A stretch of DNA of 64,000 nucleotides from Macrostomum lignano (Eukaryota), in contig NIVC01002690.1 of NCBI GenBank assembly GCA_002269645.1, positions 85,474 to 149,473 of the forward strand, in the 5' to 3' direction. Positions 6,524 through 16,933 of this stretch are shown piece after piece (position 1 is the first letter of the stretch; each line of letters opens with the position of its first letter). Made by a program: the position numbers and the translations under genes. Below the pieces are notes generated by a model. That model saw nothing but the letters and a program-made list of their open reading frames with translations. It ran no database searches and had not been told where the DNA came from.

Positions 6524-9500
6524 TCAGGTGTCGTTTTCATAGGTGTCAGTTTGCCTGCTGGCTTGGGACTGGACAGCTGCCTCAACCTGCATCTCCGCAT
6601 AGCTGCCACTGGGCCGAGCGCCGCTCCCAGCCGATGCGCCAGTCGACTGTCGCTGACGACGTGGCATGGGTGCCGGCGGCAGCGAGGATGTGGCTGGGAC
6701 TGCCGGTTGCTGCGGCGGCGGCGGTGCTGGCACCGTGGCGACTGAGCCAGGCGGCTGCGACCGAATAGTATCCAGCTCGAAGCTAGGGACCTGCGGCGGC
6801 TGAGGTTGCTGCGACGGCGGCTGCTTCCTGGAATGTTGAGAAGGGAAAATTCCTATCGCGCTTTTTTCTAGTAGTTTCTCTGTGTTCCTACTGACAGTAG
6901 GGTAAAAAAAGAAGTGTTTGATTTTCTTTAAAGGGTATTTCGATCAATGCCGAAATCGCACCGACGAAGAGCCTGAGATGTACTTTTGTCAAGACGACAG
7001 TTAAACCGTAGCCATGCAGCCACATGTACAGTAGAACGGCAAGTAGTCATGCCATTCCACTGACATGTACTCGTACATTGTAAGTATGCAGACACGCTTT
7101 CTCATTGTCAAGGCAGTGTACACAATCTCTGTGGTGCAACTTGAGCAGCCTTGGACCTCACCTGAGCTTCTGGCACTTCTGCCTCATCCAGAGCCAGATG
7201 TCGTTGGAGAAGTAGCCAGCGCAGATTCCGGCGGGCAGGAGCAGCAGAAGCAGCAGGAGCGCCAGGTGCGCATTCGATGCCGCAGGCGGCGGGCTGACTG
7301 CCGGCGTCAGGTTGACGCAGACGACAGACTCCGCGTCGCTGCAGTCGGCTCGCTGCCTGCAGGCCGCCTGAGCTGCCGGCTTCTCCTTGGCTTGAACTGA
7401 GTCCAGACTCCGCTGCATCTGCAGGCCTGCGGCTGCCGAATACTCGCCGATCTGCGCCAGTTCGTGGTGGGGCTTTAGAAAAAAATAATTAGTCCAATTT
7501 TCCTAAACTTTTCTCGTTTGATCACTCTTCAGTTTGTTCCAAGTTCTTCTTTGACTGTTTCAAGGCTGCTCCGAAAATACCCCTTTGCTTTCTACCGAAA
7601 TTCCCTCTCAATTCTTGCAAGATTCTTTCCGAAATTCCCTCTCGATTTTTGCAAGATTCTTTCCGAAATTCCCTCTCGATTTTTGCAATATTCTTTCCGA
7701 AATTCCCTCTCGATTTTTGCAATATTCTTTCCGAAATTCCCTCTCGATTTTTGCAATATTCTTTCCGAAATTCCCTCTCGATTTTTGCAATATTCTTTCC
7801 GAAATTCCCTCTCGATTTTTGCAATATTCTTTCCGAAATTCCCTCTCGATTTTTGCAATATTCTTTCCGAAATTCCCTCTCGATTTTTGCAAGATTCTTT
7901 CCGAAATTCCCTCTCGATTTTTGCAATATTCTTTCCGAAATTCCCTCTCGATTTTTTGCAAGATTCTTTCCGAAATTCCCTCTTGATTCTGGCAAGATTC
8001 TTTCCGAAATTCCCTCTCGACTTTTGCAAGATTCTTTCCGAAATTCCCTCTCGATTTTTTGCAAGATTCTTTCCGAAATTCCCTCTTGATTCTGGCAAGA
8101 TTCTTTCCGAAATTCCCTCTCGATTCTGGCAAGATTCTTTCTGAAATTCCCTCTCGACTTTTGCAATATTCTTTCCGAAATTCCCTCTCGATTTTTGCAA
8201 GATTCTTTCCGAAATTCCCTCTCGATTTTTTGCAAGATTCTTTTCGAAATTCCCTCTGGATTTTTGCAAGATTTTTTTCGAAATTCCCTCTCAATTTTTG
8301 CAAGATTTTTTCCAAAATTCCCTCTCGATTCTTGCAAGATTCTTTCCGAAATTCCCTCTCGATTCTGGCAAGATTCTTTCTGAAATTCCCTCTCGATTCT
8401 GGCAAGATTCTTTCCGAAATTCCCTCTCGATTTTTGCAATATTCTTTCCGAAATTCCCTCTCGATTTTTTGCAAGATTCGTTCCGAAATTCCCTCTCGAC
8501 TTTTGCAAGATTCTTTCCGAAATTCCCTCTCGATTTTTTGCAAGATTCGTTCCGAAATTCCCTCTCGATTTTTTGCAAGATTCTTTTCGAAATTCCCTCT
8601 CGATTTTTGCAAGATTTTTTTCGAAATTCCCTCTCGATTTTTGCAAGATTTTTTCCAAAATTCCCTCTCGATTTTTGCAAGATTCTTTCCGAAATTCCCT
8701 CTCGATTCTGGCAAGATTCTTTCCGAAATTCCCTCTCGATTCTGGCAAGATTCTTTCCGAAATTCCCTCTCGATTCTGGCAAGATTCTTTTCGAAATTCC
8801 CTCTCGATTTTTGAAAGATTCTTTGCGAAATTCTCTCTCGATTTTTGCAAGATTTTTTCAAAAATTCCCTTTTGATTTTTGCAAGATTCTTTACGAAATT
8901 CCCTTTCAATTCTTGCAAGATTCCTTTTGAAATTCCCTCGATTCTTCTAAGATTCTTCCAGTAATTCCGCTTTGATCCATCAAAGATTCGTTTTGATATT
9001 CCCTCGGGATTCCTTCCAGGATTGTTCAAATAATTTCCACAAATCCTTCTCAGCCTTCCCTCTACTTGGGAGATTTTCCCAAGGTAATCCATTGCAGGCA
9101 ATTCATTCATCAAAAGAAGCCCGCCATCAGATTTATCAGCATTGGCTGTCGGGCCGTCACCTTCCGCCAGCCCTCGGCGCCGCTGCCGAACTGCAGGACG
9201 TTCAGCCGGTTCGACCCGGTCCGGTCGTCACCGATTGGCCGATAGTCGCCGAATCGCCGCGGCTTGGCCGACGGGCCTCCTTTGGCGTCGCCGAAAAGAA
9301 TCCGGTTGCCGCGGGCCTTCATCGCCGCCCAGCTCGGATTCTGCAGCAGGGCGTCGCAAGCGGCCGTCGACGTCGCCGCTACGCAGACGTCCCGACGGTG
9401 GCGAGGCCGCCAAGCAGCAGGGCGGCGGCAGCGTTGGCTGCCAGCGGCGCCCGGCTGTCCAGGAAGCCGAGGCCGGGCAGCTCGCCGGGCGAGGCCGGTC

Positions 9501-15500: not shown

Positions 15501-16933
15501 TGTTCAACCTACATACTGCTCATGTTCATCCTGCATACTGCTCATGTTCATCCTACATACTGCTCATGTTCATCCTACATGCTGCTCATGTTCAACCTGA
15601 CATACTGCTCATGTTCATCCTGCATACTGCTCATGTTCATCCTACATGCTGCTCATGTTCAACCTGACATACTGCTCATGTTCATCCTGCATACTGCTCA
15701 TGTTCATCCTACATACTGCTCATGTTCATCCTACATGCTGCTCATGTTCACCCTACATGCTGCTCATGTTCATCCTACATACTGCTCATGTTCATCCTAC
15801 ATACTGCTCATGTTCATCCTGCATACTGCTCATGTTCATCCTACATACTGCTCATGTTCATCCTACATACTGCTCATGTTCATCCTACATACTGCTCATG
15901 TTCATCCTACATACTGCTCATGTTCACCTACATGCTGCTCATGTTCACCCTACATGCTCATGTTCATCCTACATGCTGCTCATGTTCACCTACATGCTGC
16001 TCATGTTCATACATGCTGCTCATGTTCATCCTACTACTCATGTTCACCCTACATGCTTACTCATGTTCACCTACATTCTGCTCATGGTCTTGATGACAAA
16101 GTAACTTTCAGAGTCGAGCATTGCAAAAGATTCGCAACACCTGCTGCTGCTCACCTCAGCCAAGTCGAACACCGACGGACCCGGCGTGAAGACAGCATCA
16201 GCCGAGCCTGACTCGAATGCCGTGGACATCGGCGCGTCCAGTCTGGACGGGACTGTGGCGAAGACCGGCTGGTTGAGGCGGCTGGTTGAGCCGAAGGACT
16301 CCATTGCCCTGCGGTACTGCAGCAGAAACTCCAGTTGGTATTCACTGTCCAAATTTGTGAAAACTGCAATGTGGCATTGGGACTGGTGGTGGCAGGTGGC
16401 TCATTGTGAGTAAAATTCTCAACTTGTTCAGATTTTATTATAATTTAGCTATGCTTCTGCAACGGAAATGTACTCAAATCTGGTATGTACTCAGAAGCGT
16501 TTTGATGAAGATTACTCAGCATCTTCAATTGCATGTCAAACCCCAGGACTTACCTGAACTCTTTGTCCATCTCTGCCGTTGCGCAGCCGCCACCTGCTCG
16601 GTAGACTGGCAAACCTCAGCCTGGCAAGAGGCTGGAAATGAATGTCAAACATAAATAGATATTTTAGTGCAGTAAATAAGCAGCTGCAGCCCCACAGTTG
16701 ACTTCGCCACGCGACTTACCGCCGAACCAGCGCTGCAAAATGATATTGCTAAGAGCAGCATTAATCCGCGATGAGGCATCCCAGCTGCTGTTGCTGCTGC
16801 TGCAGTTTCTCCCTGTTAGAGTTGGCTGCTGTTTTGAGTTGGACAGAATGACCGCGCGAGCTGCGCAGCTGCTGGCATCTGCAGCCCAGCCGTGTCCGAC
16901 CACGCTGGAGAGGATTAAAACTATGGACAGCAT
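6524..16933 (-). CDS. Type I membrane protein (~1200 aa): signal peptide, degenerate Venus-flytrap (ANF receptor-like) domain, Cys linker, mGluR-like Venus-flytrap domain, one TM helix and a Pro-rich tail. Exons: 16933-16720, 16631-16554, 16363-16155, 15083-14616, 13765-13424, 12566-12183, 11230-10775, 10023-9161 (1-bp deletion near 9392), 7451-7162 (alternative acceptor 7472), 6827-6524.
   Basis: N-terminus MLSIVLILSSVVGHGWAADA with an in-frame upstream stop. VFT1 motifs include LNWTYIAVV. The linker reads SECSGVCPNC. VFT2 motifs are PGDYYIGVIAPV, FGYVIIDSC, FVGALSS..LPLVSYGSTS..YPSFARTVVTD, DTDYG and WRK|IGEY. The TM segment is [20 protein letters not shown]. All ten exons join with GT-AG and matching phases. 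Confidence 0.85.
7590..8960. repeat. 34-bp tandem minisatellite in VFT-receptor intron 8
   Basis: Unit AAGATTCTTTCCGAAATTCCCTCTCGATTTTTGC; it explains the 34-aa periodic ORFs on both strands. Confidence 0.95.
10074..10695. repeat. 22/23-bp G-rich minisatellite in VFT-receptor intron 7
   Basis: Unit GTTGAGTGTCAGGTAGGGGGAGG. Confidence 0.95.
11242..12095. repeat. 24-bp minisatellite in VFT-receptor intron 6
   Basis: Unit CAGTGTCAGGGAGGGTGAATGGCT; shares an AGTGTCAGGGAGG core with variants of the intron-7 array. Confidence 0.96.
12632..12815. repeat. 29-bp tandem repeat (~6 copies) in VFT-receptor intron 5
   Basis: Unit TTAGGGTCACCAGCCTATTTCAAGGTCAT. Confidence 0.93.
13855..14608. repeat. 14/15-bp C-rich minisatellite in VFT-receptor intron 4
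   Basis: Unit TACCCCTGCTTCCC. Confidence 0.96.
15330..16085. repeat. 22-bp minisatellite in VFT-receptor intron 3
   Basis: Unit TGCTCATGTTCATCCTACATAC. Confidence 0.95.

What the first reader, a model, noticed from the sequence alone, without database searches (positions are those of the whole stretch)
6524..16933. Tandem double Venus-flytrap receptor with a single TM helix and no 7TM, cyclase or kinase
Seen: a complete 10-exon ORF from signal peptide to stop, with two consecutive VFT lobes joined by a SECSGVCPNC linker. One hydrophobic helix follows (about 7270-7210), then a cytoplasmic tail of ~115 aa. Established: VFT modules normally sit on class C GPCRs (7TM), natriuretic-peptide receptor guanylyl cyclases, iGluRs or invertebrate Venus kinase receptors. 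Inference: this architecture fits none of them and may be an undescribed non-catalytic amino-acid-sensing receptor or co-receptor.
Basis: partly seen in the sequence, partly recalled or inferred. Interest (0 to 1): 0.8.

Follow-up and report, generated by a model that had tools for sequence, protein, structure and literature searches.

The report
Tandem Venus-flytrap single-pass receptor gene
This flatworm gene encodes a membrane protein with two ligand-binding "Venus flytrap" modules, one membrane helix and no enzyme or G-protein-coupling part. It belongs to an unstudied family found from flatworms and molluscs to acorn worms, but this copy carries a one-base frameshift.

Summary
The gene is real: Macrostomum lignano BOX15_Mlig003031g1, minus strand, 16933-6524. 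The "complete 10-exon ORF" is not intact here. Exon 8 lacks one G (GGG at 9393-9391), which gives a TAG at 9381-9379, and GenBank ends this copy at 931 aa. A near-identical second locus has GGGG and encodes 1202 aa. The window's exons plus that one G reproduce it exactly.

The architecture holds: signal peptide, VFT1, a 3-Cys linker, VFT2, a second Cys motif, one TM helix and a 110-aa Pro/Gln-rich tail. There is no 7TM, kinase or cyclase in the protein, and no 7TM-like coding sequence in the 64-kb window. A convergent neighbouring gene bounds the 3' end.

VFT2 is a solid class-C-type flytrap and keeps the Ser/Thr/Tyr/Glu alpha-amino-acid-binding signature. VFT1 is degenerate and has lost all four residues.

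The architecture is not unique. About 47 of the 150 best cluster representatives share it. The ones I looked up come from bivalves, gastropods, the brachiopod Lingula and the hemichordate Ptychodera, and all are unnamed. Many carry a juxtamembrane YxxP motif. Amphioxus and bivalves have 2-5 VFTs fused to a class C 7TM domain. I found no paper on the family.

Verdict: a new variant of a known kind, of moderate interest.

The parts
16720..16933 (-). Exon 1: start codon at 16933-16931, signal-peptide-like segment (aa 1-17, 16933-16883) and start of VFT1
   Evidence: Identical to PAA55901.1 and PAA54240.1. Hydropathy.
16554..16631 (-). Exon 2 (VFT1)
   Evidence: GT-AG borders. 100% identical to L001.
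16155..16363 (-). Exon 3 (VFT1, degenerate lobe 1)
   Evidence: AF2 pLDDT is below 50 for residues 10-160.
14616..15083 (-). Exon 4 (VFT1 lobe-2 core, aa about 160-312). This is the only confidently folded part of VFT1.
   Evidence: Pfam ANF_receptor 18.5 bits at aa 153-259. The VFT1 HMM built from other phyla hits aa 168-285. pLDDT is 84-90.
13424..13765 (-). Exon 5 (VFT1, C-terminal part)
   Evidence: C343 is nearly invariant in the family.
12183..12566 (-). Exon 6: end of VFT1, the 3-Cys linker SECSGVCPNC (12383-12354) and start of VFT2
   Evidence: C501, C505 and C508 are invariant in the 15-sequence family alignment. Coordinates.
10775..11230 (-). Exon 7 (VFT2 lobe 1), carrying ligand-signature residues S659 (10951-10949) and T682 (10882-10880)
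   Evidence: Pfam ANF_receptor 88 bits. Alignment to mGlu2. Family conservation.
9161..10023 (-). Exon 8 (VFT2 lobe 2 and return to lobe 1), carrying Y730 (9987-9985) and E809 (9750-9748). It contains the 1-nt deletion in the G-run 9393-9391 and the resulting premature TAG at 9381-9379.
   Evidence: The GenBank model of this copy stops here.
7162..7451 (-). Exon 9: end of VFT2, second Cys motif (C1036-C1050, 7361-7317), TM helix (aa 1068-1092, 7265-7191) and start of the tail. An alternative acceptor lies at 7472.
   Evidence: AF2 predicts a helix at 1066-1103.
6524..6827 (-). Exon 10: Pro/Gln/Ser-rich cytoplasmic tail with YAEM (6601-6590), YEND (6541-6530) and the TGA stop at 6526-6524
   Evidence: No Pfam family at E up to 10.
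7595..16086 (.). Intron minisatellites. Periods are 34 bp at 7595-8968, 23 bp at 10066-10699, 24 bp at 11241-12095, 29 bp at 12630-12817, 14 bp at 13865-14609 and 22 bp at 15331-16086. They fill most of the large introns and hold no coding exons.
   Evidence: Introns 3, 4 and 7 differ markedly in length between the two genomic copies, and intron 2 by 1 nt.
593..4700 (+). Convergent downstream neighbour, a 4-hydroxyphenylpyruvate-dioxygenase-like gene, which bounds the 3' end of the receptor gene
   Evidence: ORF fragments. The same neighbour at L001 has Pfam Glyoxalase hits. The HPPD name is my reading of the sequence.

Best explanation
Shown:
- This is a real, transcript-annotated Macrostomum lignano gene (Mlig003031.g1).
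- Its product, with one G restored in exon 8, is a 1202-aa type-I membrane protein. In order it has a signal peptide, a degenerate class-C-type Venus flytrap (VFT1, heavily sequon-decorated), a 3-Cys linker, an intact class-C-type flytrap (VFT2), a second short Cys motif, one TM helix and a 110-aa disordered Pro/Gln-rich tail.
- It has no 7TM, kinase or cyclase domain.
- It belongs to an unnamed family with the same colinear architecture in bivalves, gastropods, a brachiopod and a hemichordate.

Inferred:
- The membrane-proximal VFT2 binds an alpha-amino-acid-like small ligand through S659, T682, Y730 and E809.
- VFT1 in Macrostomum no longer binds such a ligand and acts as a structural or regulatory cap.
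- As in other flytrap receptors, closure of VFT2 within a dimer re-orients the single TM helices.
- Lacking any catalytic part, the protein passes the signal on through associated proteins. At family level this would be a juxtamembrane tyrosine (YxxP) docking motif. In this protein the candidates are the two tail tyrosines (YAEM, YEND) or a partner receptor.

Unresolved: whether the window's own copy is functional depends on whether the missing G is real. It could be an assembly error or a very young null allele.
For: Gene model:
- Searches show that the window exons plus one G equal PAA54240.1.
- The gene models derive from RNA-seq-guided transcript assembly (PMC5730564).

Domains:
- Pfam finds only ANF_receptor.
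- There is a single TM-grade hydrophobic segment, plus the N-terminal signal peptide.
- tblastn finds no 7TM coding sequence in the window.

Fold:
- The full AF2 model scores pLDDT 71, with VFT2 at 80-95.
- Foldseek places it on mGlu2, mGlu3, mGlu5 and CaSR flytraps at target-normalised TM 0.73-0.85.
- The VFT1-only model also hits only class C flytraps, with E about 1e-8 and probability 1.0.

Family:
- phmmer against 1.84 billion representatives gives 1564 hits.
- About 47 of the top 150 have two VFTs followed by one TM.
- Pfam finds two ANF_receptor stretches and nothing catalytic in the 13 non-flatworm members scanned, long-tailed ones included. In the M. lignano paralog P0007 only VFT2 is detected.
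- The alignment is colinear with invariant Cys residues.

Ligand site:
- In VFT2 of 32 family members the counts are S 28, T 25, Y 30 and E/D 25.
- The same four residues are kept in VFT1 of non-flatworm members and lost in VFT1 of all three M. lignano paralogs.

Tail: YxxP occurs in 28 of 50 juxtamembrane tails against 6.0 +/- 2.2 in shuffles.
Against: - No ligand, partner, expression pattern or phenotype is known for any member.
- This protein itself lacks the juxtamembrane YxxP motif. A shuffle test on related sequences overstates significance.
- The window copy as assembled encodes a truncated 931-aa protein without TM helix or tail.
- VFT1 lobe 1 is predicted with very low confidence.
- Dimerisation and the SH2-docking idea rest on analogy and on my recollection of SH2 specificities. 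No test was made here.
- Taxonomic breadth rests on 20 looked-up representatives.
Confidence: 0.55

Rival explanations
1. It is a non-signalling ligand sink, clearance or uptake receptor. It would bind an amino-acid-like ligand at the surface and remove or buffer it, as NPR-C does for natriuretic peptides. The tail would serve only trafficking.
For: - There is no catalytic domain.
- The tail is short and disordered, with one YxxPhi-type motif, YAEM.
- NPR-C is a precedent for VFT plus TM plus short tail (my knowledge).
- SmGBP is a surface glutamate-binding flytrap without signalling domains in a flatworm (PMC3206071).
Against: - The enriched family motif is YxxP, not the endocytic YxxPhi. YxxPhi occurs in 16 of 50 tails against 14.5 expected.
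- Some members carry tails of 400-750 aa, which is more than a sorting signal needs.
- NPR-C itself is reported to signal (my knowledge).
Confidence: 0.15
2. It is an obligate auxiliary subunit. It would pair through its flytraps with a 7TM class C receptor, a Venus kinase receptor or another family member, and modulate that partner's signalling, much as GABA-B1 needs GABA-B2.
For: - Its flytraps are closest to mGlu and CaSR, which work as dimers.
- Tandem-VFT modules sit on class C 7TM domains in amphioxus and bivalves, so the ectodomain can drive a 7TM domain.
- M. lignano has several paralogs.
Against: - No partner has been identified.
- The conserved tail motif suggests an autonomous output.
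- Nothing in the window encodes a partner.
Confidence: 0.2
3. The window's copy is a young pseudogene, or encodes a secreted 931-aa decoy. In that case the 1-nt deletion is real and only the twin locus makes the membrane receptor.
For: - The window reads GGG where L001 reads GGGG, which gives a TAG 4 codons downstream of the deletion.
- GenBank annotates 931 aa for this copy.
- The assembly was polished with Illumina and RNA-seq reads (PMC5730564).
Against: - Exons are otherwise identical, with 0 mismatches in 3608 nt.
- The indel rate between the copies is similar in non-coding sequence: 1 gap in 2192 nt of unique intron and 20 in 9245 nt of flank. That fits residual PacBio homopolymer errors.
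- Reads from identical duplicates are hard to assign during polishing.
Confidence: 0.3
4. It is a gene-model artefact: the N-terminal part of a class C GPCR, VKR or receptor cyclase whose remaining exons were missed.
For: - 7TM-bearing tandem-VFT relatives exist in other phyla.
- The giant Polypterus 'CASR' models show that annotation artefacts occur in this superfamily.
Against: - There is an in-frame stop after a TM helix and tail.
- A convergent neighbour lies about 1.8 kb downstream at both loci.
- No 7TM-like sequence is found in 64 kb.
- The same TM-plus-tail ending occurs independently in molluscs, a brachiopod and a hemichordate.
- The models are transcript-derived.
Confidence: 0.03

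Closest known systems
Class C GPCR ectodomains (mGlu2/3/5, CaSR, T1R)
   Same: - Both flytraps are of this type by sequence and by fold.
- VFT2 keeps the Ser/Thr/Tyr/acidic alpha-amino-acid signature, with Glu at the acidic position as in CaSR (the CaSR residue is from my knowledge).
- A Cys motif follows each flytrap where the cysteine-rich domain would begin.
   Different: - There are two flytraps in tandem.
- There is no NCD3G cysteine-rich domain and no 7tm_3 domain.
- There is a single TM helix.
Unnamed tandem-VFT single-pass proteins, e.g. Lingula XP_013382567.1, Dreissena XP_052237846.1, Aplysia XP_005105500.2 and Ptychodera XP_070544526.1
   Same: - The architecture is colinear: VFT1, C-x-C-xx-C linker, VFT2, Cys motif, one TM helix and a non-catalytic tail.
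- VFT1 and VFT2 orthology is supported by HMM preference. Aplysia served as an independent test sequence.
   Different: - The Macrostomum members are divergent, at 17-20% identity.
- Their VFT1 has lost all four ligand-signature residues.
- This protein lacks the juxtamembrane YxxP motif.
NPR-C (natriuretic peptide clearance receptor)
   Same: It has an ANF_receptor-type flytrap, one TM helix and a short cytoplasmic tail without kinase-homology or cyclase domains (my knowledge).
   Different: - NPR-C has one flytrap, not two.
- It binds a peptide across the dimer.
- The protein here is closer to mGlu, CaSR and T1R than to natriuretic peptide receptors. No NPR appears among the 60 sequence hits listed or the top 50 fold hits.
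SmGBP, the truncated mGluR-like glutamate-binding protein of Schistosoma mansoni (PMC3206071)
   Same: It is a flatworm class-C-type flytrap without cysteine-rich domain or 7TM domain. It is membrane-associated, surface-exposed, binds glutamate and conserves the Ser/Thr/Tyr/Asp residues.
   Different: It has a single flytrap of 488 aa, no C-terminal TM helix and no tail.
Multi-VFT class C receptors: amphioxus 'mGluR3-like' XP_035696128.1 (2 VFT + 7TM) and bivalve proteins such as Sinanodonta KAL3856574.1 (5 VFT + 7TM)
   Same: They repeat the same unit of flytrap plus short Cys motif and lack NCD3G.
   Different: They end in a 7tm_3 domain rather than a single helix. They are also uncharacterised.
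Other tandem-flytrap sensors: bacterial BvgS/EvgS and trypanosome receptor adenylate cyclases
   Same: They have two flytraps in tandem, then one TM helix (PMC4352136; PMC6027212).
   Different: Their cytoplasmic parts are catalytic (histidine kinase, cyclase). They come from unrelated lineages, and the BvgS flytraps belong to a different periplasmic-binding-protein class (my knowledge).
Venus kinase receptors (VKR)
   Same: They are invertebrate single-pass flytrap receptors, first found in a flatworm (PMC4026697, PMC3703292).
   Different: VKRs have one flytrap and a tyrosine kinase domain. No kinase is found here.

Membership tests
Class C (family 3) GPCR | Extracellular Venus flytrap of the ANF_receptor type | tested here: met
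   Pfam PF01094, E = 1e-29. PDB sequence hits to mGlu, CaSR and T1R. Foldseek target-normalised TM 0.73-0.85.
Class C (family 3) GPCR | Nine-cysteine domain (NCD3G) between flytrap and membrane | tested here: not met
   No NCD3G hit at E up to 10 on the C-terminal 204 aa or on either half. Only short 3-4-Cys motifs are present.
Class C (family 3) GPCR | Seven-transmembrane domain (7tm_3) | tested here: not met
   No Pfam hit. One hydrophobic segment apart from the signal peptide. No tblastn match to 7TM regions in the 64-kb window.
Natriuretic peptide receptor family, including NPR-C | Single ANF_receptor flytrap followed by one TM helix | tested here: not met
   There are two flytraps per chain. 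One TM helix is present.
Natriuretic peptide receptor family, including NPR-C | Kinase-homology and guanylate cyclase domains (absent in NPR-C) | tested here: not met
   No Pkinase or Guanylate_cyc hit.
Natriuretic peptide receptor family, including NPR-C | Closest sequence and fold relatives are NPR ectodomains | tested here: not met
   Top PDB hits by sequence and by fold are mGlu, CaSR and T1R.
Venus kinase receptor | Intracellular tyrosine kinase domain | tested here: not met
   No kinase hit. The tail is 110 aa of low-complexity sequence.
Ionotropic glutamate receptor | Lig_chan ligand-binding and pore domains after an ANF-type amino-terminal domain | tested here: not met
   Pfam finds only ANF_receptor.
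Unnamed tandem-VFT single-pass family (Lingula, Dreissena, Aplysia, Ptychodera and others) | Colinear VFT1, Cys linker, VFT2, Cys motif, one TM helix and no catalytic domain | tested here: met
   Alignments A1 and A2 have invariant C501, C505, C541, C620, C748 and C931; C508 is invariant in A1 and nearly invariant in A2. Architecture census. Pfam on members.
Unnamed tandem-VFT single-pass family (Lingula, Dreissena, Aplysia, Ptychodera and others) | Ligand-signature residues (Ser, Thr, Tyr, Glu/Asp) in both flytraps | tested here: not met
   Kept in VFT2 (S659, T682, Y730, E809). All four are lost in VFT1 of the three M. lignano paralogs.
Unnamed tandem-VFT single-pass family (Lingula, Dreissena, Aplysia, Ptychodera and others) | Juxtamembrane YxxP motif in the tail (present in 28 of 50 members) | tested here: not met
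   Absent from this protein, which has YAEM and YEND instead. Present in the paralog P0007 as EYDVP.
Trypanosome receptor-type adenylate cyclase | Two flytraps, one TM helix and a cyclase catalytic domain | tested here: not met
   No cyclase domain. The architecture of that family is from PMC6027212.

The most novel reading that the evidence does not exclude
The tandem-VFT single-pass proteins may be an ancient bilaterian class of G-protein-independent, non-catalytic nutrient or amino-acid receptors. They would signal by ligand-driven rearrangement of flytrap dimers and by phosphotyrosine docking on a conserved juxtamembrane YxxP motif. They may also share a repeating 'flytrap plus mini-Cys' unit with previously unnoticed multi-flytrap (2-5 VFT) class C GPCRs. 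The Macrostomum genes would be a derived branch in which the distal flytrap became a non-binding cap.
Probability: 0.25. Interest if true: 0.75.

Novelty: new variant of a known kind. Interest (0 to 1): 0.55.

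Why it matters
Venus flytrap modules are the ligand sensors of glutamate, GABA-B, calcium, taste and natriuretic-peptide receptors. Their known outputs are a 7TM domain, an ion channel, a cyclase or a kinase.

A conserved family that joins two class-C-type flytraps to a single helix and a non-catalytic tail would add another output mode. It would also show that the flytrap unit can be multiplied, up to five copies on a 7TM domain in bivalves.

The family offers a simple system for two questions. 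How is flytrap closure passed across a membrane without a 7TM domain? What does a second, distal flytrap contribute? M. lignano has transgenesis (PMC5730564), so the question is testable in vivo.

For genome annotation, these genes are currently left as 'hypothetical' or 'uncharacterized', or are mislabelled 'mGluR-like'.

Tried and rejected
**A 56-nt GT-AG mini-intron (9396-9341) as a way to restore the frame in exon 8.** I rejected it for three reasons:
- It would delete the segment holding C931 and C940. C931 is invariant and C940 invariant or nearly so in the family.
- Its donor, GTCGGG, is unlike the other nine donors.
- The twin locus simply has one more G.
The other six GT-AG candidates of length 3k+2 in that region fail on the same grounds.

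**An exon 9 acceptor at 7472 (ctaaag|CCCC).** It is possible as an alternative. The GenBank model and the family motif (Y-x-x-V/I-G) favour 7451.

**The word-indexed homologue searches.** The exhaustive phmmer search gave the family instead.

**A selection test between the two genomic copies.** It has no power. Exons show 0 mismatches in 3608 nt and unique introns 1 in 2192 nt.

**The giant 2-4 kaa Polypterus 'CASR, partial' hits with 8-10 flytraps.** I treated these as probably fused tandem gene models, not as real multi-VFT proteins.

**Direct BLASTP of VFT1 against VFT2.** The match is weak (E = 0.025) but in register over the S-x-G-S-T-S motif. On its own it is not convincing.

**Seven literature searches** for a described eukaryotic ANF-type tandem flytrap with one TM helix found none.

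Full report
**What is there**

The minus strand between 16933 and 6524 carries ten GT-AG exons. A database search identifies the product as Macrostomum lignano BOX15_Mlig003031g1 (PAA55901.1), at 100% identity.

The exons sum to 3629 nt, which is not a multiple of three. The frame changes inside exon 8 and a TAG follows at 9381-9379. GenBank accordingly ends this copy at 931 aa (...LATVGTSA), before the membrane helix.

A second locus of the same assembly (NIVC01002946.1, fetched as L001) encodes a 1202-aa protein, PAA54240.1. All ten exons are 100% identical between the two loci except for one base. The window reads GTCGGGACGTC where L001 reads GTCGGGGACGTC. With that G restored, and with exon 9 starting at 7451, the window translates exactly into PAA54240.1.

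The two loci are syntenic over more than 28 kb and differ mainly in minisatellite copy number. Mismatches are 0 in 3608 nt of exon, 1 in 2192 nt of unique intron, and 0.25% in the flanks. There is therefore no power to tell an assembly error from a very young mutation.

The assembly is a Canu PacBio assembly polished with Pilon. It holds 180 Mb of duplicated blocks at 95% identity or more. Its gene models come from RNA-seq-guided transcript assembly (PMC5730564). This indirectly supports the splice junctions, including 7162 to 6827.

A 56-nt mini-intron could also restore the frame. It would remove two cysteines, C931 (invariant) and C940 (invariant or nearly so), so I reject it.

**Architecture**

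- Hydropathy shows an N-terminal signal-like segment and one strongly hydrophobic segment, residues 1068-1092 (genomic 7265-7191). A 110-aa tail follows.
- Pfam finds only ANF_receptor. The second half scores 88 bits. The first half scores 18.5 bits, below the 25.4-bit cut-off. The last 204 residues match nothing.
- tblastn finds no sequence resembling a class C 7TM domain anywhere in the 64-kb window.
- The gene's 3' end faces a convergent gene on the plus strand, which looks like 4-hydroxyphenylpyruvate dioxygenase. The arrangement is the same at both loci.
- The large introns consist mostly of distinct minisatellites and hold no hidden exons.

**Are there really two flytraps?**

VFT2 is unambiguous. 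By sequence it matches mGlu2/3, CaSR and T1R ectodomains. In an AlphaFold2 model built on a 32-sequence family alignment it is confident, with pLDDT 80-95. Foldseek places it on mGlu and CaSR flytraps at target-normalised TM 0.73-0.85.

VFT1 is degenerate, and several lines of evidence bear on it:
- Only its lobe-2 core, residues about 160-312, is confidently folded. Residues 10-160 score below pLDDT 50.
- A VFT1 profile built from other phyla hits residues 168-285 in register.
- BLASTP against VFT2 aligns the S-x-G-S-T-S motif weakly.
- The whole protein aligns colinearly with relatives that have two strong ANF_receptor domains.
- The VFT1-only model retrieves only class C flytraps, with E about 1e-8 and probability 1.0 over 400-490 columns, though TM scores are low.

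I conclude that VFT1 is a true but eroded flytrap. It carries 10 of the 12 ectodomain N-glycosylation sequons.

**The family**

An exhaustive phmmer search of 1.84 billion representatives gave 1564 hits. I ran a local census of the best 150 with a flytrap HMM and a hydropathy filter. About 47 have two flytraps followed by a single hydrophobic helix.

Pfam on fourteen of these, including six with tails of 400-750 aa, finds ANF_receptor and nothing catalytic. It finds two ANF_receptor stretches in all thirteen non-flatworm members. In the M. lignano paralog P0007 it detects only VFT2.

The members I looked up are:
- two further M. lignano paralog groups;
- the bivalves Dreissena, Solemya and Mactra;
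- the gastropods Patella, Aplysia and Batillaria;
- the brachiopod Lingula;
- the hemichordate Ptychodera (Pfam).

All are labelled hypothetical or uncharacterized.

Each flytrap is followed by a C-x(3-7)-C-xx-C motif. HMM preference shows that first and second flytraps are orthologous across phyla. Aplysia was an independent test, because it was not used to build the HMMs.

Related proteins carry the same unit in front of a class C 7TM domain, again without NCD3G. There are two copies in amphioxus and five in bivalves.

**Ligand site**

VFT2 aligns to mGlu2 as follows: S145 to S659, T168 to T682, Y216 to Y730 and D295 to E809. These four positions are conserved in VFT2 of 25-30 of 32 family members. 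They are also conserved in VFT1 of 12-13 of 14 non-flatworm members. All three M. lignano paralogs have lost all four in VFT1.

It is established knowledge for mGlu, CaSR and T1R that these residues hold the alpha-amino-acid moiety. SmGBP, a flatworm flytrap with the same residues and no 7TM domain, binds glutamate (PMC3206071). I therefore infer an amino-acid-like ligand for VFT2 only. The side-chain specificity cannot be predicted from what I have.

**Tail**

This protein's tail is 18% Pro and 15% Gln. It has just two tyrosines, in YAEM and YEND, and no SH3 consensus motif.

Across the family, a YxxP motif lies within 45 residues of the helix in 28 of 50 tails. Shuffles give 6.0 +/- 2.2, with a maximum of 15 in 1000. 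YxxPhi is not enriched. This protein lacks that motif, although its paralog has EYDVP. Reading YxxP as an SH2 docking site (Crk, Nck or Abl type) is my recollection of SH2 specificities, not a result obtained here.

**Mechanism and rivals**

Best-supported reading: a dimeric, non-catalytic single-pass receptor. Its membrane-proximal flytrap binds a small amino-acid-like ligand, and its output depends on associated proteins or tail tyrosines.

The rivals are:
- a ligand sink like NPR-C;
- an auxiliary subunit of a 7TM or kinase receptor;
- for this copy only, a truncated decoy or pseudogene, if the deletion is real;
- a missed-exon artefact, which is essentially excluded.

**Comparison with the known**

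The modules are of class C type, but two of the three defining features of class C GPCRs are absent. It is not an NPR, VKR or iGluR by domain tests.

Tandem flytraps with one helix are known in bacterial BvgS/EvgS and in trypanosome adenylate cyclases, both of which are catalytic (PMC4352136; PMC6027212). Seven full-text searches found no description of the eukaryotic non-catalytic form.

**Verdict**

- The thing is a new variant of a known kind. It is already present in databases but unnamed and unstudied.
- Interest is moderate.

Noticed in passing
window 7595-16086 (introns 3-8): Each large intron holds its own minisatellite, with periods of 22, 14, 29, 24, 23 and 34 bp and up to 52 copies. 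Introns 3, 4 and 7 differ markedly in length between the two near-identical genomic copies, and intron 2 differs by 1 nt, while the exons are identical.
   Followed up: partly
window 593-4700, + strand: A multi-exon gene whose ORF fragments look like 4-hydroxyphenylpyruvate dioxygenase. It is convergent with the receptor gene. The same neighbour, with Pfam Glyoxalase hits, lies at the twin locus L001.
   Followed up: partly
window 26832-30186 and 32258-32728: A tandem array of more than 3 kb that reads SVCLSVCL... in one frame and RQTDRQTD... on the other strand, with AT skew down to -0.94. A shorter copy lies about 2 kb further on. Other repeat arrays sit at 30.5 kb, 33.2-34.1 kb and 35.6-36.1 kb.
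   Followed up: no
related proteins P0097 (Branchiostoma XP_035696128.1), P0011 (Sinanodonta KAL3856574.1) and P0016 (Argopecten XP_069135753.1): These are class C receptors with 2 (amphioxus) or 5 (bivalves) tandem ANF_receptor flytraps in front of one 7tm_3 domain, and no NCD3G. Forms with 3 and 4 flytraps also appear among the hits. I found no description of such multi-flytrap GPCRs.
   Followed up: partly
related protein P0156 (M. lignano BOX15_Mlig007438g1, 1499 aa): This paralog has an N-terminal extension of about 350 aa made of repeated units, with a weak fn3 hit (20.5 bits, below the cut-off), in front of the double flytrap.
   Followed up: partly
related proteins P0009 and P0014 (Polypterus senegalus 'CASR protein, partial', 3171 and 3927 aa): These have eight to ten flytrap matches in one predicted protein. 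They are most likely tandemly arrayed receptor genes fused by annotation.
   Followed up: no
window 5699-6090: A minisatellite in the intergenic space between the two convergent genes. It reads as repeated YGPSHTVDSDRFGV units in one frame.
   Followed up: no
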